From the IMG/VR virus record IMGVR_UViG_3300025770_001492, positions 124,001 to 188,000 of that record: a DNA stretch of 64,000 bases. One strand, written 5' to 3'. Every line of letters begins with the position of its first letter. The stretch's first letter is position 1. Made by a program: the position numbers and the translations under genes. Under the pieces are notes generated by a model that was not told the origin of the DNA, ran no database searches, and saw nothing but the letters and a program-made list of their open reading frames with translations. Below are positions 30,464 through 62,982 of the stretch, piece by piece.

Positions 30464-31027
30464 TTAAAAATCAGAAGAAACCAAGTAGTCATATTCCGAA
30501 AGACTCACCTGCCCTGATCTGATTCCTTTTTCTCTAGTAATTCTTTTGCCCATAGATTTTTGAGCATTCCAGGTTATAGATTTACAATATGTTACAAATT
30601 TACTGTCTATTCGTAAAGGTGCTTTTCTAGAGAGTCTTTCTTTTTTTGGAACTATCTTCTTAACAAGTTTTTCTAGAATCTTTTCTTGATGAGGTCCAAA
30701 CTTTTGCTTATTCGCTCCGTGTCGAGTTTTATTTCTCCAAAGCTCACACAACTCTTCAACCACACATTTTACAAATTTATCTTGTGCGTGTTTGGCACAA
30801 AGCTCCAAGCATCCAACAATGTAAACCTGCCTCTTGTAGTAAGAGCCTGCCCTAATTAAGGCTATTCTGAGTTCTTGTGAAATATCTGTTTGTTCATCCG
30901 TGTGATTATTTCTAGAATTTTTTTTAATCAACTGCCATGCGGCATATTCGCACAAATCGCCAAACTTTTCATCAAGCTTTTCATATTCCTCTGATGTTAC
31001 AGGAAATTGAGTAAATATAGATTTCAA
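30464..31027 (-). CDS. sigma70 region-2-only protein (gp55-like late sigma candidate)
   Basis: L..KFGDLCEYAA..DISQELRIALIRA (2.1-2.2) and FVTYCKSITWN (2.3-2.4); no region 4. Confidence 0.55.
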   Translation of the reverse strand: MKSIFTQFPVTSEEYEKLDEKFGDLCEYAAWQLIKKNSRNNHTDEQTDISQELRIALIRAGSYYKRQVYIVGCLELCAKHAQDKFVKCVVEELCELWRNKTRHGANKQKFGPHQEKILEKLVKKIVPKKERLSRKAPLRIDSKFVTYCKSITWNAQKSMGKRITREKGIRSGQVSLSEYDYLVSSDF

Positions 31028-31038
31028 GGTATCTCCAA

Positions 31039-32310
31039 TTAGTTTATAGGCTTCATGTCATTGAGATTTTTCCCAATCTCACATGAAATTTTTAATTTTA
31101 AATTTGGATACAGATTATCGTCATCTGACTCCAGAATATCTTTTGATAAGTTATAAACCTTACGACAGTCGCTCGGCCTAACATAAAAAATATAACCATC
31201 ATGAACGTGCATCGCTATTCTTGCATCTTTAATTTCCCGGTGCAGCATGACAAGTTTATGCAAACAGACCGTAGATGCAGGAGATTGAATTACAAAATTT
31301 CTAATCCTATAATCTTGCTCTCCAAAAAATCGCTTTTTTCCGTAATGGTCTAAAGCATATCCGTCATCTTTAACAATTTGCTTGGCAACATATTCCAATG
31401 CGACCGAGTATTTATTTTGTATCTTTGTAATCAACTTATTGGCGACATCAAACGGTATCCCAAGCCGTTTCGAAAGGGACTTTGCGCCCTGTCCAAATAT
31501 GACAGGTAAAAATATACCCTTACAAATCCTTCTCGAATCTGGTGTTGGCTCCAATGTCGTGATATCTCTCCAAATCGTATTATACAAATCTTGCCCTGTT
31601 GCAAGATTTTTCCCCAACTCAGGATCATCAGAAAGCCATTGCAGCATAGAAACTTCCTGATGATTGAAGTCTATGTACATGAAAATTTCATCAAATCCAG
31701 CAGGTCTGAACAATTCTCTATCGGACTCGTTAATTGAATGGGGATTAAAGCTTTTGTCTGAGAATTTTGAGCATTTGCTTCGACCGTTAACTTGTCCAAG
31801 AATCTCGTAATAGGAATTTAGCTTTAATCTGTTTTTGGTGTGTATGATGCCTGCGTTTTCTATATCAGGTATCACACTAGTTATAAGCGGGAGATAAATA
31901 TTTTTGTAAATATATTTTAATTTATCCCAATTTGCGTCCTGCATGATGCTGACTAGTCTGGACTGGGCAGTTTTAAAACTCTCTGGGGCTTTCTCAAACA
32001 CTCCAAAAAAACACTCTAAAACCTTTAAGTCCAACAAGTTAGAGTCCAAATCATATTTCAATCCAAGCACATTGCCAACATGGGAAAATAAGTTTTTCAA
32101 ATCCCATCCAATCAACACTTTATTTGGATCATTTATATAAAAATCAATTTCGCCCAATTGTTCAGCAAGCTGACTTCTGTCGCTCGACAGATCTATTTGC
32201 ACTCGTTTGTTTCCGCCAATAATAATCAATCTTTTAGAAACAGTGCCTTCTACAGCAATAAAAATATTGCTATCTACCAACTGCTCTAAGGCTTGTGCTA
32301 ATTCGCTCAT
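31039..32310 (-). CDS. compact family A DNA polymerase lacking the thumb subdomain
   Basis: Motif A DFNHQE, motif B R..CK..F...IFG, NFVIQS, motif C VHDG; degenerate exo remnant; E..GI helix joined almost directly to the NGR strand. Confidence 0.8.
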   Translation of the reverse strand: MSELAQALEQLVDSNIFIAVEGTVSKRLIIIGGNKRVQIDLSSDRSQLAEQLGEIDFYINDPNKVLIGWDLKNLFSHVGNVLGLKYDLDSNLLDLKVLECFFGVFEKAPESFKTAQSRLVSIMQDANWDKLKYIYKNIYLPLITSVIPDIENAGIIHTKNRLKLNSYYEILGQVNGRSKCSKFSDKSFNPHSINESDRELFRPAGFDEIFMYIDFNHQEVSMLQWLSDDPELGKNLATGQDLYNTIWRDITTLEPTPDSRRICKGIFLPVIFGQGAKSLSKRLGIPFDVANKLITKIQNKYSVALEYVAKQIVKDDGYALDHYGKKRFFGEQDYRIRNFVIQSPASTVCLHKLVMLHREIKDARIAMHVHDGYIFYVRPSDCRKVYNLSKDILESDDDNLYPNLKLKISCEIGKNLNDMKPIN

Positions 32311-32332
32311 AGTAAGAGTGTAATGAAAAATC

Positions 32333-32393
32333 AAACAACTAACAAGATCGAAAAAACAACTAACGAGTTAAAACAAGTTTAAAAAACAAGTTT
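32333..32393. repeat. iteron-like direct repeats
   Basis: AAACAACTAAC at 32333 and 32354 (21-bp spacing); AAAACAAGTTT at 32370 and 32383. Confidence 0.6.
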
Positions 32394-32399
32394 TGTATG

Positions 32400-32890
32400 C
32401 GCATAATCTCCTCCAAGTTTTATCTGGCCTTAATGCTTTCACCCTATTAATTAATTACTAATAATAACAAGGGGGATATAAGAGCACAGATAAACTGAGT
32501 TAATGTTCTTACTGACTTGTCTAATAAGAATCATTGTGTACAAGCAATAACAAAATCCAATTTGAAATTTACATAAAGCAATTGTCTTGAATTACTTTTT
32601 CTTTATAAATTTCTTGTAAACGTCCTAACCAAAGTAAAGGAGAAAGATCTTTTTCAACTTTCTCACCCCAAGAGTTGGGTACGAATGGTTACGTAACAAT
32701 CCAACTGTTTTGCCGTTTTTAGGGGATGGTTTCAATACTCTGGCTCACCTAGTTTACTGCTCTCATGTAGATCTGGAGTTAGATCCGATTAGCAAGCAGG
32801 GCCACCTCGCAGAGTCAGGTTTTGTTTATCAGGCTGTAATTTGGGATTTTTTCAAATAATTCCTGATAAGGCAGGATGATGCCTAGCATG
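32400..32890. ncRNA. large structured non-coding element (ncRNA, long leader and/or replication origin)
   Basis: No ORF >=60 aa; consecutive stems AGTTT.TATCTG/CAGATA.AACT, TTCTTA/TAAGAA, GAAATTTA/TAAATTTC, TAACCA/TGGTTA, GAGAAAG/CTTTCTC, ACTCTG/CAGAGT, TTATCAGG/CCTGATAA, AGGCA/TGCCT. Confidence 0.6.
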
Positions 32891-32907
32891 TTTTTAAAGT
32901 TGAAACT

Positions 32908-32966
32908 AAGTTAGTAACTCTAAATAATAAAGTCAACTTGACTTGAGAAAAAAAATTTTATATAAA
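32908..32966. promoter_or_regulatory. back-to-back sigma70-type promoters
   Basis: Palindrome AAGTCAACTTGACTT supplies TTGACT on both strands; + TTGACT-N17-TATAAA, - TTGACT-N17-TAACTT. Confidence 0.6.
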
Positions 32967-32995
32967 TCTCAATTCGAACAAAGGAAAATTTCTCA

Positions 32996-33685
32996 ATGCC
33001 AGACCCTCTCGAAGCAATTTTGCATCATCAAATGAATAAACTTGAGGCGAAGGCTTATAAAATCTCCCTAATGTGGGTCGAGATGTCTAGAGAGCAATTT
33101 CCTAATTATCAACATGTTCGAATTCGAAAAACAGGTGATCCTCGAAAATCCCTTCTTTTTAAACACTGCTACAAATTAGCAAAAGAAACCAACGGCATAT
33201 TGCCAGACAAAGAATATAAACTATACATTCTAGCTCAACTTCATATTTTAAAGTCAATTAACGATGGAAAAATACACGCCTTAATTGATCCTCAGTGCTT
33301 GCATGGAGAAAAAGCTTGGAGAAGATGGCAAGTTTGGAAAAGAAGATATGATGCTCACCGCATTAAAACTCAATCAATAGAAAACTTGAGTTCAGATAGC
33401 ACCTCTAGAGTGCTGAGGGAATTAGAAAAAACAAAAATGTTTTTAGCTGATCGCAACTGCCTAATTTATAGGCAGTACGAAGAAAAAGTTTTAGATAGAA
33501 CCATGATTAAATGGATAACATTTGGATGGGTGTCACCAATTTATTCGCTGTTAAGCCCTTGGATGGCTAAGGTTCTGAATGAACCAATTGAGAAAGCATT
33601 CTCTTTTGACTTTTCTATCTATAAATCTTCGATCAACGATGAAGTCGTAAATAGGTTTAAGGAAATTTTTGACTATGAACAATAG
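32996..33685 (+). CDS. T4 gp59-like helicase loader (putative)
   Basis: Size and pattern resemble gp59: AYKISLM, FKHCYKLAKE, YILAQL, AWRRWQVW, IKW...VSPIYSLL. Confidence 0.5.
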   Translation: MPDPLEAILHHQMNKLEAKAYKISLMWVEMSREQFPNYQHVRIRKTGDPRKSLLFKHCYKLAKETNGILPDKEYKLYILAQLHILKSINDGKIHALIDPQCLHGEKAWRRWQVWKRRYDAHRIKTQSIENLSSDSTSRVLRELEKTKMFLADRNCLIYRQYEEKVLDRTMIKWITFGWVSPIYSLLSPWMAKVLNEPIEKAFSFDFSIYKSSINDEVVNRFKEIFDYEQ

Positions 33686-47904: not shown

Positions 47905-49884
47905 ATGTTTAGAAATTGGATAGAAAATAAAGAACAGTTAAATAAATCGGTCAACAAGTCAATTGACGAAATTGTTTATGGCGATATGGATGAAAAGACA
48001 GATGCTCTGTCTAAAAAAGAGCATCCTCTCTTTAAAGGAAGATTTAAGGTAGACCCACCACCTTCCAACACCTCGAAAGAAACTATCGAGGAACTTAAAG
48101 AGCTAGAAAAGATGAGTCATTTTAAGTCCAAAGATATCATGAAAGATATGAAGGATTTTGATGTGGCTCAAGTCAAGCCATTTGAAGATTATCTTAAACA
48201 AAATTCTCTAGATTTCGATTTCAAAATGCTTAACAAAATACTTAAGCAAGGCGAAATACTTGGACTAAAGCTTAAAAAGAAGTTCAACAGACCAAGACCG
48301 CATCAGATCGCACCCAAGATGGGTCTAAACATAATGTATCATGATTTGAAAACAGACGATACGCCAGCTTATCCTTCAAATCACTCTTTGATTTCTTCTT
48401 TAATTGCTCTATATCTTTCTTCGCTATATCCGAAACATGAAAAAGGATTCATGGACATTGCAGACAGGATCGGAATTAGCCGATTATATGGAGGGACTCA
48501 TTATCGAAGCGATCATGATTCTGCAAGGAAACTAGCTAAGGACATCATGAAGTCTTGGAAACCTGCTGTTAAGCCTGCAAAATATTCGTTCACTGAGTGG
48601 ATGCTGAAGCTCGAAGACCAAGGTATCCACGCATTCATGCGAGTGGCAAGTGAAAAATATAAAGACGACAGAAGTAAAGACATTCTTGTTATTTATGGAA
48701 ATACGACGCCAATTAAAGACAAACTAAAAGAAATAACAAAATTTACTTGGAACCAAGGTGGCTATTGGAGCACGGGCAGGTGGAGTCTGAATAATGATGT
48801 GATTCAAAAACTCATAGAGCTAACTGGAATAACTGATTTGAAAGAAATCATAGATGCTGGACCGCAATTTAACGCTGATTCGACTGAGGCAGAAGAAGAG
48901 AAAGATGCACCCAAGAGTCAAGTTGATGCGATTCTTGGTAACATGGAACAGGAAATTGAAAACGCTAAAGGCAAAGCGGGCGGTAAAGCAAAACAAATTC
49001 TCACCATGATTGAAAACTATCTTGAAAAATTGGCCAACTTGGTTGATGAAGAAATCAAATCAGGATTCGTTAAAGACTTTATGCGGTTTGCTGCTAAATT
49101 CCACAACTACTCTTTCAATAATCAAATGTTGATTTACGCACAAAAGAAAGATGCAACTTACGTAAACTCTGAAAGTCGTTGGCTTAAACTCGGAAGAGCA
49201 GTTACCAATAAGGATCAAGGAATTATAATTCTTGCGCCTATGACAGGAAAGAAAAAAGAAAAAGATGCAGATTTAGAGGGGCAAAAGGAAGAAAGAAAAT
49301 TTGTATTCTTCAGACCCGTTAAAGTTTATGATATTTCTTCAACACAAGTCATATCAGGACAAGAAGACAAGGCAAAAGTGTTTGAGCCAAATGATTGGCG
49401 ACAAGATACTGATGAAAACACTGAAGAACTTACCCTGCTCATCAATGCAGGAATAGAAATAGCCAAGCAAAAAGATATATCTATCGACTATGAGGAACTA
49501 GCTCAAGGTACGGGCGGCTACTCTGCGGGTGGAAAGATTGTAATCAACAACACCTATGGTGGAATCAACAAGTTTAGCACTCTCGTACATGAACTCGCCC
49601 ATGAAATACTCCATCAAGTAATGAAGCCAGAAGAAAGAGCAAAAGAAAACAAAAGAGATTTTGAATATGATGCTGAATCTGTGGCCTATATCGTTCTTCA
49701 ATACTTTGGATTTGAAACCAAAGACTCTCCAAGATATATCGCTCTATGGAAAGGCGACAGCAAAGCAGTTAAAGGAAGAAGAGAAAATATCAGCAAAGCA
49801 TCAAAGGAAATCATTCAAGGCATAAAAAAGAATGTCGAGGATATGGTAATTCAAGATGATCTCCCTGAAGAAGATGCTGCCTAA
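47905..49884 (+). CDS. polyvalent fusion: PAP2-type phosphatase + ArdC-N ssDNA-binding + zincin metallopeptidase
   Basis: K..FNRPRP / YPSNH / SR..G.HY.SD; FHNYSFNNQMLI..Q..AT..W..LGR.V; HELAH...EYDAES. Confidence 0.85.
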   Translation: MFRNWIENKEQLNKSVNKSIDEIVYGDMDEKTDALSKKEHPLFKGRFKVDPPPSNTSKETIEELKELEKMSHFKSKDIMKDMKDFDVAQVKPFEDYLKQNSLDFDFKMLNKILKQGEILGLKLKKKFNRPRPHQIAPKMGLNIMYHDLKTDDTPAYPSNHSLISSLIALYLSSLYPKHEKGFMDIADRIGISRLYGGTHYRSDHDSARKLAKDIMKSWKPAVKPAKYSFTEWMLKLEDQGIHAFMRVASEKYKDDRSKDILVIYGNTTPIKDKLKEITKFTWNQGGYWSTGRWSLNNDVIQKLIELTGITDLKEIIDAGPQFNADSTEAEEEKDAPKSQVDAILGNMEQEIENAKGKAGGKAKQILTMIENYLEKLANLVDEEIKSGFVKDFMRFAAKFHNYSFNNQMLIYAQKKDATYVNSESRWLKLGRAVTNKDQGIIILAPMTGKKKEKDADLEGQKEERKFVFFRPVKVYDISSTQVISGQEDKAKVFEPNDWRQDTDENTEELTLLINAGIEIAKQKDISIDYEELAQGTGGYSAGGKIVINNTYGGINKFSTLVHELAHEILHQVMKPEERAKENKRDFEYDAESVAYIVLQYFGFETKDSPRYIALWKGDSKAVKGRRENISKASKEIIQGIKKNVEDMVIQDDLPEEDAA

Positions 49885-53183: not shown

Positions 53184-53186
53184 CAG

Positions 53187-53260
53187 TAGGGCCGACTGGA
53201 CTCGAACCAGTAACCGCCGGTTTATGAGACCGGTGAACTAACCAATTGTTCTACAGCCCC
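53187..53260 (-). tRNA. tRNA with CAT anticodon (elongator Met or Ile2); CCA not encoded
   Basis: GGGGCTG/CGGCCCT acceptor, CCGGT-CTCATAA-ACCGG anticodon arm, ACTGG-TTCGAGT-CCAGT T-arm. Confidence 0.92.
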
Positions 53261-58945: not shown

Positions 58946-60070
58946 ATGGTGGACAAAACCCCCAATGCAGTTGGAAGAGTTTTGCTGTTTTCTGATTTGC
59001 ATATCCATCCTCACAAGCGAAAAACAGAACGTCTTGAGGATTGTCTAAAAGTTTTGGAATGGGTTTTCGATACTGCCATCGAACGAGGAATTGAAAACAT
59101 TCTCTTTGGCGGCGATCTTTTCCATGACAGGCAAAAAATAGATGTCTTAACTTATCAGCGAACATTCGAGATATTTGACAAAAAGATATCAGAATGGAGA
59201 AAGGGCAACGGCGAAGCCAAAATTTGGCTTTTGTTGGGCAATCATGATTTGTGGCACCTTAAAAAACATGATGTGTCTAGCGTGTACCCCCTTGCTGCTA
59301 TAGATGGCGTTGAAATTATTTCAGAACCCTGTACTCGAACTATTTGCTCGAACTCTGAGGGAGAAGAATTTCAGGTTAGCTTTCTTCCGTACACGCACAA
59401 TCCGCCTGAAGATCTTGGAAAAATAGAAAATAAGTCTGAGAACAAAGTTTTAGTCGGGCATATAGCAATTGATAATGCTGTCTGGAACAGACTCCACGGA
59501 ACTCGTTCAGAAGTTTCAATTGAACACGATGGAGACATGATCAAAGTTGACACTAAAATATTTGACGGATGGAATCAGGTATTTCTAGGACACTACCACG
59601 CAGAGCAACAGTTGGATTTCAATACTGAGTACATAGGAAGCCCTTTGCAGTTGAGTTTTGGAGAGGCTTTTCAACACAAACACATAGTCCAATTCGATTT
59701 AAAAAACAACGACAAAGAATATATCAGAAACACATTCAGTCCTCAGCATTTTATAATTCCAGAAGCCGATTTGGAAAAATATGTTTTAGATAATAATTTT
59801 ATCAGAGTTCTTGTGGAAGATATATCTGATTCTAAAACTATAGAGATGAGGCAAAAGCTGACTGAAGACAACGATGTCGGCAGTTTGGAAATTCAGCAAT
59901 CATCAAAGAAAAAAGAAGAACACATAGTCGAGGATGCTAAGGCTATTTTGTTCAAAGAAGAAGAAATGTTAGATCAATACGTTGATGAAGTAGAGAAGGG
60001 TTCTGGTTTGGACACACTGGAAAAAGAACATCTGCTAGAAATTGGTAAGAATATATTACAGTCAGAGTAA
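58946..60070 (+). CDS. Mre11/SbcD-like nuclease (T4 gp47-like)
   Basis: SDLH, GGDLF, GNHD, GH, GHYH, YIGSP. Confidence 0.92.
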   Translation: MVDKTPNAVGRVLLFSDLHIHPHKRKTERLEDCLKVLEWVFDTAIERGIENILFGGDLFHDRQKIDVLTYQRTFEIFDKKISEWRKGNGEAKIWLLLGNHDLWHLKKHDVSSVYPLAAIDGVEIISEPCTRTICSNSEGEEFQVSFLPYTHNPPEDLGKIENKSENKVLVGHIAIDNAVWNRLHGTRSEVSIEHDGDMIKVDTKIFDGWNQVFLGHYHAEQQLDFNTEYIGSPLQLSFGEAFQHKHIVQFDLKNNDKEYIRNTFSPQHFIIPEADLEKYVLDNNFIRVLVEDISDSKTIEMRQKLTEDNDVGSLEIQQSSKKKEEHIVEDAKAILFKEEEMLDQYVDEVEKGSGLDTLEKEHLLEIGKNILQSE

Positions 60071-60079
60071 GATTTTAAA

Positions 60080-60952
60080 ATGAAAGACGCAATAATTTCT
60101 TGGGCTAGTGGTTACGATTTCTGCCGCTTACCGGAATTCAATATATTTCTAAACTCTATTAGAAGATCTGGCTTCAAGGGCGACGTTGTTCTGTTTAGTC
60201 ACGATCTCGATGATGAAATCCATGACAAATTTTTGTCAATGGACTACAAGATAGTGATGACGGAGAAAGATAGAGTTCATTTGGTTGTAAGAGACAGGTT
60301 TTTACTGCTTTATGAATGGCTAATAAAGAACGGGGACAATTATGACAACATCATAATGACAGACTCAAAAGACGTACTCTTCCAAAAAAATCCTTCTGAC
60401 TACTTTTACATGAGGCAACTTTGTGCAGAAGGTGACAGGCCATTCACGAATCTGGGTGAAGAACAATCAATGAGCCACCAAGAACTTGAGAAATACGTTC
60501 TTTTGTGTTGCGAGGGAAGTGTCCACTACAAAAGCGAATGGAATTCTCAGAATCAAATTCGACTGCAAATGAATGTAGATGAATTCAAAATGCCTTTTAT
60601 TAAAAGGCCAATAATTAATTCTGGATTCATCGCAGGAAGTCCAGAAGAATTGAAAAATCTATGTTTATTAATGTGGTCAAATTCTATCAGAACTGTTACA
60701 AAATTAAGTGAACAGGCAACTCTTAATTATCTTTATTTCTTTTTAGAGAAAGACCCCATTTACAAGCTTTATTATCCTCAAGACGATCCGTTTTGCTTGA
60801 CAGGAGAAGGCGTTAAGCAAGGGTGGGTTGAATGTACAAAAATGAAAAAAGACGGATTAGTTTACAATTCTGAAACGGATATGCCTTACTTTGCTTTCCA
60901 CCAATGGGAAAGAACCCAATATAGAGATGAAATAATGGAGATGTATTCATGA
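60080..60952 (+). CDS. glycosyltransferase-like protein
   Basis: DRF, MTDSKDVLFQ.NP, INSGFI.G, EQA.LN, HQW. Confidence 0.65.
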   Translation: MKDAIISWASGYDFCRLPEFNIFLNSIRRSGFKGDVVLFSHDLDDEIHDKFLSMDYKIVMTEKDRVHLVVRDRFLLLYEWLIKNGDNYDNIIMTDSKDVLFQKNPSDYFYMRQLCAEGDRPFTNLGEEQSMSHQELEKYVLLCCEGSVHYKSEWNSQNQIRLQMNVDEFKMPFIKRPIINSGFIAGSPEELKNLCLLMWSNSIRTVTKLSEQATLNYLYFFLEKDPIYKLYYPQDDPFCLTGEGVKQGWVECTKMKKDGLVYNSETDMPYFAFHQWERTQYRDEIMEMYS

Positions 60953-62982
60953 TAGATCTGAAATTTAACTTTGTTGCAGCACAAAACTTTCTTTGTTTTG
61001 GGCCTGAAGGTATTGAGGTAGACCTTACAGAATACGGAAATATCATTTTGATTCGTGGAGAAAACATGGATGTTTTCGAAGAAGAAGAGAAAGTGTCTTC
61101 AAATGGCGTTGGGAAGTCCTCAATACCAGAAACGATTGTGTATACCCTTTATGGCAAAACAATAAAGCAACCCAACAAATTAAGTCACAATAATGTGATT
61201 AATAATAAGACTGGGAAGAAATTAAGAACAGAGGCCAGATGGGATAACTTTAGAGTTATTAGAACTAGAAAGCCTGATTCATTGAGAATTTGGGAGTCTC
61301 CAGACGGAGATTGGAGTCAAATTGATAATGAAGGATGGGCAGACCAACATGAGATTTCTTTAGGAGGCATGCCCGCTACTCAGAAGTTAATAGAAGAAAA
61401 GATTGGTTTAAACTATCAAACATTTGTCAATGTGGCTGTCTTTACAGACAATAACTCTGGATCTTTTTTAGAATGCGATACTCCAACTAAACGTCAAATC
61501 GTAGAAAACTTATTAAGCTTAGACAAATATAGGCATTATTCTGAGACCGCTAAAAAGTCTAGAAATGAATTTAAAGAAAATATAAAATTAATTTCATCTG
61601 AGTATGATCGAGTTCTTGGTGATAAAACATCGTGCGACAATAGGTTAAAGCAAGCGAAAGAAGAAGAAGTATCTTGGAAAAAAGATAAAGAACAAGAGAT
61701 AGTCACATTAAAGGCTTTTATAGAAAAAACAAAGTTAAAATTAGCCGAAACGGATTTGGGCGATGCGATTAATGAATACAGAAGTGCCCAAGAGGAAATA
61801 GAGACCATTGATTTGTCAATTAAAGAAAAAGATTCAGTTCTAGCAAAGGTTAAGACTTTGTTGGACAAGGCTACCGAAAAGTTAAATTCTGAATCTGTTT
61901 TAAAAAATGATTCGTTTAATAAAATAAACTCACTATCAAGCTCTATAGCATCTTTGCAACGAGAAGTTTCTAAAAATGAAAAAACTATAGAAAATTATGA
62001 ATCTAAGAAGGACACCAAATGCCCCACATGCTTGGGATTTGTCAAAGAAGAAAATTACATTTCTTTAGTAGATTCATGTAAAGAGATTATATCATCGAAG
62101 AATTCAGAGATAAACAATCTCACAACGCAAAAGAACACAGAAGATGCGGCTTTTCAAAAACAAGAATCTTCGATATCTAAAATAAACGAAAGCATAAATA
62201 CTGGACAAAACCATTATCGTTTACATTCAAAGCAGATAGACGACTTTAGAAATAGAAGATCTATCTTAGAGAAGATAGAAAAGCCAGAAGGCGATGTTCA
62301 AACAGCGGTTTTAACTTCTAAAATAGATGAATCAAAAAAACAAATAGTAAATATAGAAGAGCAAATAAAAGGAACGTCTCCCTATGAAGCAATCATCAAG
62401 AGATGTAAAGAAGAGTTTTTAAGCAAAGAAAAGGAATGTTTATCTAAAAGAACAGAATTGAAAAAAGCTGAGAAAGAATTGCCTTACTATGAATTCTGGG
62501 TTAAAGCTTTTGGAGATTCTGGAATTAGGAAGATTGTAGTAGACGGCATAGTGCCAGCACTTAACTCTAGAGTGTCCCATTGGTTACAATTTTTAATTGA
62601 TGGAAAAATTTCTTTATCTTTCAACAATCAGTTTGAAGAAACCATTGATAGAAATCCAAAAGATGGCGATCCTTTTGTTTACTACGCAATGAGCGGCGGC
62701 GAAAGGAGAAGGCTTAATTTAGCTGTTTCTCAAGCGTTTGCACACGTCATGATGCTTAACTCTGGGGCTTCACCATCTTTAGTATTTTTGGATGAAGTTA
62801 CCACAAACATCGACCCAATTGGTGTCCAAGGCGTCTACAATATGATTGTCGAACTATCGAATCATAAACAAGTCTTTGTTACAACTCATGACCATGATTT
62901 ATTGGACATGTTATCTGGTTGTAAAAGTATTAATTTAAAGAAAATTAACGGATTCACAACGCTCTGTGATGACCGTAATTAA
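60949..62982 (+). CDS. Rad50/SbcC-like ATPase (T4 gp46-like)
   Basis: NGVGKSS, coiled coil with CPTC hook, MSGGE, FLDE, TTH. Confidence 0.93.
   Translation: MIDLKFNFVAAQNFLCFGPEGIEVDLTEYGNIILIRGENMDVFEEEEKVSSNGVGKSSIPETIVYTLYGKTIKQPNKLSHNNVINNKTGKKLRTEARWDNFRVIRTRKPDSLRIWESPDGDWSQIDNEGWADQHEISLGGMPATQKLIEEKIGLNYQTFVNVAVFTDNNSGSFLECDTPTKRQIVENLLSLDKYRHYSETAKKSRNEFKENIKLISSEYDRVLGDKTSCDNRLKQAKEEEVSWKKDKEQEIVTLKAFIEKTKLKLAETDLGDAINEYRSAQEEIETIDLSIKEKDSVLAKVKTLLDKATEKLNSESVLKNDSFNKINSLSSSIASLQREVSKNEKTIENYESKKDTKCPTCLGFVKEENYISLVDSCKEIISSKNSEINNLTTQKNTEDAAFQKQESSISKINESINTGQNHYRLHSKQIDDFRNRRSILEKIEKPEGDVQTAVLTSKIDESKKQIVNIEEQIKGTSPYEAIIKRCKEEFLSKEKECLSKRTELKKAEKELPYYEFWVKAFGDSGIRKIVVDGIVPALNSRVSHWLQFLIDGKISLSFNNQFEETIDRNPKDGDPFVYYAMSGGERRRLNLAVSQAFAHVMMLNSGASPSLVFLDEVTTNIDPIGVQGVYNMIVELSNHKQVFVTTHDHDLLDMLSGCKSINLKKINGFTTLCDDRN

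What the first reader, a model, noticed from the sequence alone, without database searches (positions are those of the whole stretch)
31039..32995. Thumb-less family A polymerase directly downstream of a ~500-nt fully structured non-coding element
Seen: the ~424-aa PolA keeps motifs A (DFNHQE), B and C (VHDG). The helix ending DIENAGII runs almost straight into the NGR..S strand, so the thumb that normally lies between them is absent, and the exonuclease is degenerate. Upstream is the longest gene-free gap in the window (32311-32995), filled end to end with stems and multi-way junctions. A leftward TTGACT-N17-TAACTT promoter would transcribe all of it as a ~590-nt leader. Known: the PolA thumb grips the duplex for processivity, and ncRNA+polymerase pairs are familiar for retrons and DRT reverse transcriptases. 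Inference: this could be an RNA-associated PolA module in which the RNA acts as primer, template or scaffold replacing the thumb. G-U pairs favour + in some stems and - in others, so the strand is not settled.
Basis: partly seen in the sequence, partly recalled or inferred. Interest (0 to 1): 0.85.

Follow-up and report, generated by a model that had tools for sequence, protein, structure and literature searches.

The report
Thumbless phage polymerase behind structured RNA
An uncultivated large phage encodes a short family-A DNA polymerase that really lacks its thumb, and the about 590 bases in front of it hold a conserved, covarying RNA of no described family. The two are neighbours in many related phages, but nothing yet shows that the RNA works with the enzyme.

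Summary
Both halves of the observation hold. The 423-aa PolA (31039-32310, minus strand) has invariant polymerase motifs A, B and C. Its exonuclease fold has lost the catalytic residues, and 13 residues stand where KlenTaq has about 115 residues of thumb. It belongs to a uniform family of about 257 clusters (50% identity), found only in uncultivated phages, on contigs up to 596 kb.

The 661-bp gap is the longest ORF-free stretch in the window. It does not fold better than shuffled sequence. Five related lineages nevertheless keep it with long invariant blocks and compensatory base-pair changes, and invariant G-U pairs place the RNA on the PolA strand. A conserved TTGACT-N17-TAACTT promoter precedes it. 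No terminator, second promoter or Shine-Dalgarno motif was found before PolA. No Rfam family matches.

Sequence profiles find three families of such elements directly upstream of PolA, on its strand, in 32 of 58 loci. One huge-phage clade has no spacer, so the enzyme can exist without an RNA encoded directly upstream.

Best reading: a structured 5' leader of the replication operon. That the RNA acts as primer or as a replacement for the thumb is neither supported nor excluded. A thumb-truncated, exonuclease-dead phage PolA (divPolA1) was described in 2024, but it is at most a remote relative.

The parts
31039..32310 (-). Thumb-less family-A DNA polymerase, 423 aa
   Evidence: Pfam PF00476 E 4.7e-24; AF2 pLDDT 95.3; Foldseek hits to Pol nu, Pol theta, Klenow and Taq; P0001 is 100% identical and 423 aa long
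31936..32310 (-). N-terminal exonuclease-like domain (about residues 1-125) with degenerate active site
   Evidence: Whole-length structural superposition on Klenow-type enzymes; positions matching Klenow D355 and D424 not conserved, E357 kept in 26 of 73
31786..31851 (-). Junction where the thumb is missing (GIIHTKNRLKLNSYYEILGQVN)
   Evidence: Profile positions 163-176 replace KlenTaq chain residues 157-272; translation checked
31654..31671 (-). Motif A, DFNHQE (catalytic D214, steric-gate E219)
   Evidence: Both invariant in 73 of 73 homologues; coordinates checked
31492..31533 (-). Motif B, RRICKGIFLPVIFG
   Evidence: R260, K264 and G273 invariant; F267 in 72 of 73
31192..31209 (-). Motif C, HVHDGY
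   Evidence: H370 and D371 invariant
32311..32398 (-). 88-nt U-rich linker (53% U) between RNA core and PolA AUG; no Shine-Dalgarno motif
   Evidence: No conserved pairing in the linker and only a two-pair invariant stem just inside the ORF, 0 compensatory changes; no terminator or minus-strand promoter listed here; composition
32399..32901 (-). Conserved core of the structured RNA, about 503 nt, from predicted start to the invariant UGCGC
   Evidence: Alignments A1 and A3; RNAalifold gives 39 of 98 pairs with compensatory changes; no Rfam match
32758..32907 (-). 5' domain of the RNA (7 helices, 35 pairs)
   Evidence: Model R2; 95.9% of cells paired; 15 compensatory pairs against 1-4 in slid controls; 0 of 500 shuffles
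32613..32761 (-). Central domain of the RNA (7 helices, 37 pairs; invariant blocks AACCAUCCCC, GGGGUGA, UUUGGUUAGGAC)
   Evidence: Model R1; 93.8% of cells paired; 11 compensatory pairs against 0-3 in slid controls; 0 of 500 shuffles
32393..32612 (-). Variable region and 3' domain of the RNA, less conserved and weakly supported
   Evidence: Only 14 predicted pairs, 5 compensatory; one further covarying hairpin (UCUUAUU/AGUAAGA) seen by eye in A11
32908..32936 (-). Sigma-70-type promoter of the RNA and PolA operon: TTGACT, 17 bases, TAACTT
   Evidence: Coordinates; position and hexamers conserved in L002, L005, L008 and L010; below the threshold of the consensus scan
32938..32966 (+). Divergent promoter-like site TTGACT, 17 bases, TATAAA for the 229-aa gene; the two -35 boxes sit back to back in a near-palindrome
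   Evidence: Sequence
30464..31027 (-). 187-aa all-helical protein, 11 nt after the PolA stop, with GGAG before its TTG start; near-constant partner of this PolA
   Evidence: Present directly after PolA in nearly all loci; 53-96% identical where PolA is 33-45%; AF2 pLDDT 90, no significant fold match
32996..33685 (+). 229-aa protein of unknown function, divergent partner across the spacer
   Evidence: Homologue found upstream and divergent in 49 of 58 loci, at 520-950 nt in 29 of them; no Pfam, PHROG or Atlas lead

Best explanation
The gap is not empty DNA. It encodes an RNA of about 500 nt with conserved, covarying structure. The RNA is transcribed from a conserved sigma-70-type promoter in the same direction as PolA.

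No terminator, second promoter or Shine-Dalgarno motif was found between it and the PolA start codon. It is therefore most likely made as the 5' leader of the replication-operon transcript (PolA, the 187-aa protein, a DnaB-type helicase and further genes).

Its many invariant unpaired nucleotides suggest that it binds something, either a protein of the replication module or a small ligand. It would then act in cis on the amount, stability or translation of that transcript. It may also be cut off as a stable RNA.

The polymerase is a catalytically competent DNA polymerase with a dead exonuclease and no thumb, so it is expected to be poorly processive on its own.

Shown: the conservation, the covariation, the strand, the constant position upstream of PolA, the loss of the thumb, and the retention of the catalytic residues. 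Inferred: transcription from this promoter, co-transcription with PolA, and any regulatory action.
For: - Conserved length and sequence in five lineages whose PolAs are 56-84% identical to this one.
- Compensatory changes well above both controls in two domains.
- Invariant G-U pairs that are valid only on the PolA strand.
- Promoter hexamers conserved in position.
- No terminator-like site and no other minus-strand promoter-like site between 32399 and 32310.
- Related elements (families W, B and C) sit on the PolA strand, ending roughly up to 430 nt before the called PolA start, in 32 of 58 loci, and nowhere else in the loci held.
- In family-C loci and in L010/L016, where the 229-aa gene lies 1.2 kb or more away, the RNA still sits next to PolA.
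- Families W and C share the -10 region, the AACUU start, hairpin 1 (with compensatory changes across both families), the hairpin-2 loop ending AUCCC, and AAAACCUG.
Against: - No expression platform was found. The linker and the start-codon region show no conserved pairing, so this is not a classic riboswitch or attenuator.
- About 500 nt of conserved structure is far more than known phage translational operators need.
- There are no transcript data.
- The -10 hexamer is weak (3 of 6) and the consensus scan missed the promoter.
- A phage-specific promoter or a processing site in the linker cannot be excluded.
- 26 of 58 loci have no detected element, and one clade has no spacer.
Confidence: 0.4

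Rival explanations
1. Stand-alone ornate RNA. The element would be a discrete, stable, large non-coding RNA of the GOLLD or ROOL kind, made or processed separately. Its job would be unrelated to the polymerase, and it sits here only because this is the main intergenic region of the early/replication module.
For: - Size of about 500 nt, multi-helix junctions and long invariant unpaired blocks.
- A structured core sharply separated from PolA by an unstructured, poorly conserved linker.
- The nucleotide blocks stay invariant even in the lineage whose PolA is only 56% identical.
Against: - No terminator after the core.
- Never found away from PolA. Pattern scans of viral, metagenome and genome collections returned only this clade plus apparent chance hits.
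- Related elements in other clades keep the same position and strand.
Confidence: 0.2
2. Origin primer RNA. The transcript would fold, form a persistent hybrid with the template in the U/T-rich tract, be cut by an RNase H, and be extended by the adjacent distributive PolA to start replication. This is how ColE1 RNA II is extended by Pol I, and it resembles R-loop origins of T4.
For: - A structured transcript of about 590 nt from a strong promoter at the head of the replication module, between divergent genes.
- A T-rich tract with a 21-nt tandem repeat lies just downstream of the core.
- The neighbouring enzyme is a family-A polymerase expected to make only short extensions.
- The element stays next to PolA when the locus is rearranged.
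Against: - No conserved antisense promoter or RNA I-like element was looked for or noticed.
- The repeats in the linker are not conserved beyond the closest relatives.
- The local GC-skew change follows gene orientation.
- No RNase H gene was seen in the window.
- A clade without the spacer keeps the PolA.
Confidence: 0.13
3. The RNA would be a stoichiometric partner of the polymerase, acting as scaffold, clamp or template and substituting for the missing thumb.
For: Constant adjacency and shared strand of RNA and PolA across families W, B and C. The thumb is truly absent.
Against: - The LR756511 clade and several other loci keep the same thumb-less enzyme with no upstream spacer.
- The RNA diverges into families that sequence profiles cannot link to one another, while the PolA stays alignable end to end.
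- The invariant steric-gate Glu and ordinary motifs A to C give no sign of RNA-templated synthesis.
- There is no precedent for this in family A.
Confidence: 0.07
4. Duplex grip supplied in trans by a protein. The 187-aa all-helical protein, encoded 11 nt after the PolA stop, would be the accessory subunit, as MP is for the truncated staphylococcal CCPol or thioredoxin for T7 polymerase. The RNA would then be irrelevant to the missing thumb. This concerns the polymerase only and is compatible with the leader-RNA reading.
For: - A 165-200-aa ORF follows PolA within about 36 nt, often overlapping the stop, in nearly all loci.
- It is also the only other protein of this module found in GenBank phages, again right after PolA in LR756511.
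- The confident model has long helices of 25-35 residues.
Against: - It is 53-96% identical where PolA is 33-45% identical. A dedicated partner would be expected to change at a similar rate, and such conservation fits better a protein that binds a conserved host machine.
- Language-model and structure look-alikes point weakly to sigma-70 region 2.
- No fold match to any polymerase thumb.
Confidence: 0.15

Closest known systems
divPolA1 of Flavobacterium phage vB_FspM_immuto and related 155-190 kb phages (Virol J 2024, PMC11348598)
   Same: About 440 aa, palm catalytic residues kept, thumb truncated, exonuclease aspartates replaced. It sits at the head of a run of replication genes (SSB, RecA-type recombinase, DnaB).
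   Different: Only remote similarity: hhalign E 0.019, and BLASTP 23% identity over 78 residues. tblastn at E 1e-5 found none of the divPolA1 phages. Motif C there reads YTYDAF, not HVHDGY. The immuto genome has no homologue of the 187-aa partner beside its divPolA1, no 229-aa gene annotated in the last 5 kb, and no long spacer.
CCPol-MP of staphylococcal SCC elements (as summarised in PMC10201439)
   Same: A truncated family-A polymerase encoded with a small partner protein and a helicase.
   Different: CCPol has lost most of the exonuclease domain, not the thumb. No RNA is involved. Not tested here beyond reading the paper.
ColE1 RNA II extended by DNA polymerase I (established knowledge, not tested here)
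   Same: A structured transcript of 500-600 nt from a sigma-70 promoter, working together with a family-A polymerase.
   Different: No origin, RNase H site or antisense regulator has been shown here, and there is no sequence similarity.
Large ornate RNAs of phages and bacteria: GOLLD, ROOL, OLE, HEARO (Rfam)
   Same: Size, many helices, long invariant unpaired stretches, phage origin.
   Different: No match to any of the 4227 Rfam models, even at E up to 10. Not beside tRNA genes. Always directly upstream of one particular gene and on its strand.
Translational operators of T4 replication genes (gp43, gp32, RegA targets; established knowledge)
   Same: RNA elements in the leaders of phage replication genes that bind replication proteins.
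   Different: Those are short hairpins or pseudoknots that overlap the ribosome-binding site. Here the structure is about 500 nt and lies 88 nt from the start codon, with no conserved pairing in between.
Retron and DRT reverse transcriptases with their non-coding RNAs
   Same: A polymerase gene next to a structured non-coding RNA.
   Different: The enzyme here is family A, with the steric-gate Glu and no reverse-transcriptase domain. The locus is a phage replication module, not a defence island.

Membership tests
Family A DNA polymerase (Pfam PF00476) | Significant match to the family profile | tested here: met
   E 4.7e-24, 85.5 bits against a cut-off of 34.3, but only over profile positions 141-380
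Family A DNA polymerase (Pfam PF00476) | Catalytic motif A Asp, motif B Arg/Lys, motif C His-Asp | tested here: met
   D214, R260, K264, H370 and D371 invariant in 73 of 73
Family A DNA polymerase (Pfam PF00476) | Thumb subdomain between the first palm helix and the strand before motif A | tested here: not met
   13 residues in place of KlenTaq chain residues 157-272; confident model without it
Family A DNA polymerase (Pfam PF00476) | Active 3'-5' exonuclease carboxylates (present in proofreading members only) | tested here: not met
   Equivalents of Klenow D355 and D424 variable or hydrophobic; E357 kept in 26 of 73
divPolA1 (PMC11348598) | Truncated thumb together with replaced exonuclease aspartates | tested here: met
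divPolA1 (PMC11348598) | Sequence relatedness to the immuto / LR796625 group | tested here: inconclusive
   hhalign E 0.019, colinear over palm and fingers; BLASTP 23% over 78 aa; no tblastn hit at 1e-5
divPolA1 (PMC11348598) | Replication genes in a conserved run downstream | tested here: met
   DnaB, gp32-like SSB and RecA/UvsX-like genes lie downstream on the same strand
divPolA1 (PMC11348598) | A second, regular DNA polymerase elsewhere in the genome | not testable with these tools
   None in the 64-kb window; the other 180 kb or so of the contig could not be read
Any Rfam 15 family (including GOLLD, ROOL, OLE, HEARO, group I/II introns, RNase P, tmRNA, 6S, riboswitches) | Covariance-model score at or above gathering | tested here: not met
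   Only a tRNA-Met elsewhere in the window; best hits in the gap 14.6-18 bits, E 1.1-6.1; none in the 16 loci tested from other clades
Riboswitch or attenuator-type leader | Conserved aptamer plus an expression platform (terminator, or a helix covering the ribosome-binding site or start codon) | tested here: not met
   Conserved structured core present, but no terminator and no conserved pairing in the linker or at the AUG
Retron / DRT module | Reverse transcriptase next to its non-coding RNA | tested here: not met
   The enzyme is PF00476 with an invariant steric-gate Glu
ColE1-type RNA II primer | Mapped origin, RNase H processing, extension by Pol I, antisense RNA I | not testable with these tools
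Sigma-70 family (for the 187-aa partner) | Match to region 2 or region 4 profiles or folds | tested here: not met
   No Pfam or PHROG hit; profile against PDB E 0.15 or worse; Foldseek E 1 or worse against PDB, about 0.5 or worse against BFVD; only Atlas look-alikes with TM 0.34-0.42

The most novel reading that the evidence does not exclude
The leader RNA and the thumb-less PolA would form one functional unit for starting replication. The folded transcript would be the primer, or the origin-marking ribonucleoprotein partner, which the distributive PolA extends or holds. That would be a phage-encoded counterpart of RNA II with Pol I, built around a new class of large RNA and widespread in huge phages.
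Probability: 0.15. Interest if true: 0.9.

Novelty: new variant of a known kind. Interest (0 to 1): 0.62.

Why it matters
Two things stand out.

The first is a large, uniform family of family-A polymerases that have shed the thumb and the proofreading site. It has about 257 clusters at 50% identity and no cultured representative, and it sits at the head of the replication module of large and huge phages. How such an enzyme holds DNA, and whether it is the replicase or an initiator or repair enzyme, is open. The only published parallel (divPolA1, 2024) is at most a remote relative.

The second is a set of large structured RNAs, absent from Rfam, that has kept its place in front of this gene while the RNA sequence diverged into at least three families. 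RNAs of this size with many invariant unpaired nucleotides are rare, and most have turned out to be ribozymes or ribonucleoprotein cores.

The pairing gives a concrete, testable system for the question of what large phage RNAs do. It also offers a possible entry to how huge phages start or control replication.

Tried and rejected
- **Known RNA family.** Rfam at gathering score on the window, at E up to 10 on the gap, and at gathering score on 19 loci found nothing but tRNAs. ARAGORN found one tRNA-Met far away.
- **Hidden coding gene.** The longest ATG ORF in the gap is 19-60 aa and is not conserved. Indels are not multiples of three and the substitutions are compensatory.
- **Thermodynamic support.** Rejected: z-scores run from -0.2 to -1.7.
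- **The RNA elsewhere in public data.** Two gapped patterns were run on viral contigs, and one of them also on metagenome contigs and on genome contigs. They returned only this clade. The other hits were a GC-rich coding region in a Thermomicrobiales MAG and an ORF-poor contig, neither of which matches the profile or model R1.
- **Models R1 and R2 on distant PolA loci.** No significant hit. R2 gave weak hits (12.1 and 9.5 bits) at the right place in L047 and L089, which led to the comparison with family C.
- **Linking families W, B and C by iterated nhmmer.** They stay separate. The homology between W and C rests on shared motifs and one shared covarying hairpin. Family B is unresolved.
- **The 187-aa protein as sigma factor or as thumb.** Neither was shown.
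- **The 229-aa protein.** No lead.
- **Inserted ORFs upstream of PolA in spacer-less clades.** No Pfam match, except an HNH-helicase in L028.
- **Membership in divPolA1.** Inconclusive.
- **Start-codon sequestration.** Not found.
- **One failed call.** A DNA search was one base over the size limit and was not repeated.
Full report
**What is there**

The window is part of a 245-kb uncultivated phage contig. Around the finding, on the minus strand, lies a replication and recombination module. It holds a 423-aa PolA (31039-32310), a 187-aa protein, a DnaB-type helicase, a gp32-like single-strand binding protein and a RecA/UvsX-like recombinase. A DEAD-box helicase also lies on the minus strand. 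An Mre11/Rad50-like pair lies on the plus strand at 58946-62982. A 229-aa gene of unknown function points the other way from 32996. Between the two lies 32335-32995, the longest stretch of the window without any ORF of 50 aa or more (661 bp; the next is 325 bp).

**The polymerase**

Pfam DNA_pol_A matches only residues 205-425, which is profile positions 141-380 of 381.

A search of 5.8 billion proteins gave 157 relatives. Nearly all are 415-445 aa long and align end to end, on contigs up to 596 kb. A profile search of 1.84 billion representatives found 257 clusters at E up to 1e-30, against 8,526 at 1e-10. The best 150 are mostly 400-460 aa, apart from a few truncated entries and a few with an N-terminal extension. 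This is a sharply bounded family.

The AlphaFold2 model built on 73 homologues is very confident (pLDDT 95.3, pTM 0.93). It superposes over its whole length on Pol nu, Pol theta, Klenow, Bst and Taq.

The family profile aligns positions 141-163 to KlenTaq chain residues 136-157 (the helix that ends in EATGV) and positions 176-412 to residues 272-525. So 13 residues stand where KlenTaq has about 115, which is the thumb.

D214 and the steric-gate E219 (motif A), R260, K264 and G273 (motif B) and H370-D371 (motif C) are invariant in all 73 sequences; F267 is kept in 72. The positions matching the exonuclease carboxylates are mostly not conserved.

**What is already known**

The 2023 reclassification of family A polymerases describes 'broken' thumbs and insertions in the thumb but no loss of it (PMC10201439).

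A 2024 paper describes divPolA1 in Flavobacterium phage immuto and 13 related genomes. It has a truncated thumb and all three exonuclease aspartates replaced, it sits before a conserved run of replication genes, and a regular polymerase lies elsewhere in the genome (PMC11348598).

I fetched the immuto genome to compare.
- Its gene 1 (441 aa) is only remotely similar to this family: hhalign E 0.019, and BLASTP 23% identity over 78 residues.
- Its two small neighbouring proteins are unrelated to the 187-aa protein.
- There is no long spacer before it.

So the design is known, but this family is a separate or very distant lineage. Among GenBank phages only the 595-kb LR756511.1 carries this PolA and the 187-aa protein.

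**The gap as RNA**

Folding of the single sequence gives no support. The z-score is -1.7 for the whole gap and -0.2 to -1.5 for pieces of 143-150 nt.

Comparison gives strong support. Relatives whose PolA is 84, 83, 65 and 56% identical to this one keep a spacer of 663-753 bp. It holds long invariant blocks such as CAGCCUGAU, AAAACCU, AACCAUCCCC, GGGGUGA, UUUGGUUAGGAC and UGCGC, separated by helices that change by compensatory substitution. RNAalifold found 39 of 98 pairs with changes on both sides.

| Domain (window coordinates) | Cells paired | Slid controls | Compensatory pairs | Slid controls | Shuffles reaching it |
|---|---|---|---|---|---|
| 5' domain, 32758-32907 | 95.9% | 30-43% | 15 | 1-4 | 0 of 500 |
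| Central domain, 32613-32761 | 93.8% | 39-55% | 11 | 0-3 | 0 of 500 |

There are only about five independent lineages, so these figures are indicative, not proof. The 3' third is less conserved and only weakly supported.

Several G-U pairs are invariant. On the other strand they would be C-A mismatches.

**Transcription unit**

On the minus strand, TTGACT (32936-32931), 17 bases and TAACTT (32913-32908) precede the conserved core. The hexamers and their position are kept in the relatives, with better -10 boxes in L008 and L010.

Its -35 box lies back to back with a plus-strand TTGACT-N17-TATAAA site that faces the 229-aa gene.

The core ends at the invariant UGCGC (about 32399). The next 88 nt up to the PolA ATG are 53% U, poorly conserved and without conserved pairing. 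They hold no terminator-like site, no further minus-strand promoter-like site and no Shine-Dalgarno motif. The 187-aa gene, in contrast, has GGAG before its start.

The simplest reading is one transcript: a leader of about 590 nt, then PolA and the genes after it.

**How general the pairing is**

Neither nhmmer nor the two covariance models find this RNA (family W) outside its own clade. Pattern scans of the viral, metagenome and genome collections returned only that clade plus apparent chance hits.

The architecture, however, is much older than family W.
- A homologue of the 229-aa gene lies upstream and divergent in 49 of 58 distinct PolA loci. It is 520-950 nt from the PolA start in 29 of them.
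- These spacers hold other conserved non-coding elements. Iterated nhmmer defines family B (10 loci) and family C (15 loci among the spacers, 16 in the whole-locus search).
- Together with W that makes 32 of 58 loci. Every hit is on the PolA strand, ends up to about 430 nt before the called PolA start, and none lies elsewhere in the loci held.
- Family C hairpins covary (11 of 15 pairs), and family B shows a few compensatory changes.
- None of the 16 loci of these clades that I tested matches Rfam.

Families W and C share several features: the -10 region, the AACUU start, a first hairpin that covaries across both families, a second hairpin whose 9-nt loop ends in AUCCC, and AAAACCUG. I judge them probably homologous over the first 100 nt or so. 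Family B could not be linked to either.

In family-C loci where the 229-aa gene lies 1.2 kb or more away, and in L010/L016 where a glyoxalase gene has come between it and the RNA, the RNA stays next to PolA.

In the clade of LR756511 (L001, L051, L075, L088) a 391-aa ORF of unknown function fills the space, with no spacer. In L017 a 551-aa ORF precedes PolA. The thumb-less enzyme can therefore exist without such an RNA encoded directly upstream.

**The partner protein**

A 165-200-aa ORF follows PolA within about 36 nt, often overlapping the stop codon, in nearly all loci. It is 53-96% identical to the window's copy where PolA is 33-45% identical.

Its model is confident (pLDDT 90.2) and all-helical, but it has no significant match in PDB or BFVD. 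It also has no Pfam, PHROG or PDB-sequence match. Atlas look-alikes hint at sigma-70 region 2 with low scores.

It could be an accessory subunit that supplies the grip on the duplex, or a transcription factor. Its slow rate of change argues mildly for the second.

No other DNA_pol_A fragment and no other DNA polymerase family was found in any ORF of 100 aa or more in the window. The rest of the genome could not be read.

**Interpretation**

I rate the explanations as follows.
- A structured 5' leader acting in cis on the replication operon: most likely (0.4).
- A separately acting large RNA: 0.2.
- An RNA II-like origin primer extended by the neighbouring PolA: 0.13.

A thumb function supplied in trans by the 187-aa protein (0.15) concerns the enzyme only and is compatible with any of these.

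What is shown: the missing thumb, the intact catalytic core, the dead exonuclease, the conserved and covarying RNA, its strand, and its persistent position before this gene. What is inferred: transcription from the conserved promoter, co-transcription with PolA, and every functional statement.

**Verdict**

The polymerase is a new lineage of a recently described design. The RNA is an undescribed family within a wider, undescribed set of leader elements upstream of this PolA.

Noticed in passing
window 30464-31027 (-): The 187-aa all-helical protein after PolA is more conserved than PolA itself (53-96% against 33-45% identity). It follows PolA in nearly every locus and has no fold or family match, only weak sigma-70 region 2 look-alikes.
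   Followed up: partly
window 32931-32943: The -35 boxes of the two divergent promoter-like sites sit back to back in a near-palindrome (AAGTCAACTTGACTT). This could be one shared control site for both transcription units. It is conserved in the close relatives.
   Followed up: partly
L031, L032, L035, L039 (e.g. L031:3370-3806), and L033, L038, L042, L044, L045, L055: A second family (B) of conserved non-coding element lies upstream of PolA. It has a covarying hairpin CCAUG...GAUAG/CUAUC...CAUGG and is followed by a small conserved ORF of 55-67 aa (longer, about 86-93 aa, in L033 and L042) just before PolA. It has no Rfam match.
   Followed up: partly
L047, L076, L079, L089, L053, L063, L086, L087 and 8 more (e.g. 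L076:3099-3680): A third family (C) of about 480-580 nt has very long invariant blocks (GUCUUUGUAG, ACGGGA, UAUGUUUAAACACAGA, CUAAGUCGGCACUCGG) and covarying hairpins. Its 5' part resembles the window's RNA.
   Followed up: partly
L001, L051, L075, L088 (e.g. L051:2814-3986) and L017:2312-3964: In the clade of the 595-kb phage LR756511 the spacer is replaced by a 391-aa ORF that overlaps the PolA start. In L017 a 551-aa ORF takes that place. Neither has a Pfam match.
   Followed up: partly
window 32333-32374: A tandem 21-nt direct repeat (AAACAACTAAC[A/G]AG...) lies in the U-rich linker between the RNA core and the PolA start. It is only partly kept in the closest relatives.
   Followed up: partly
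window 32996-33685 (+): The 229-aa protein with no detectable family is a conserved divergent neighbour of the PolA operon in 49 of 58 loci (33-89% identity outside the window's own contig).
   Followed up: partly
window 53186-53260 (-): A single tRNA-Met (CAT) gene, the only Rfam or ARAGORN hit in the window.
   Followed up: no
window, ORFs of 100 aa or more from 116 to 26331 and from 33766 to 60952: There are many sugar- and small-molecule-modifying enzymes for a phage: several SAM methyltransferases, sulfotransferases, glycosyltransferases, a dTDP-sugar epimerase-like protein and a TylF-like O-methyltransferase. There are also an ornithine/aspartate carbamoyltransferase, thymidylate synthase, DHFR, an IMPDH/GMP reductase and an amidoligase.
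   Followed up: no
window 47905-49884 (+): A 659-aa protein combines a PAP2 phosphatase domain with an ArdC-N (anti-restriction, ssDNA-binding) domain, which is an unusual fusion.
   Followed up: no
P0022, P0123, P0126, P0131, P0148: A few members of the thumb-less PolA family carry an N-terminal extension of 80-120 aa, giving total lengths of 507-545 aa. The extension was not examined.
   Followed up: no
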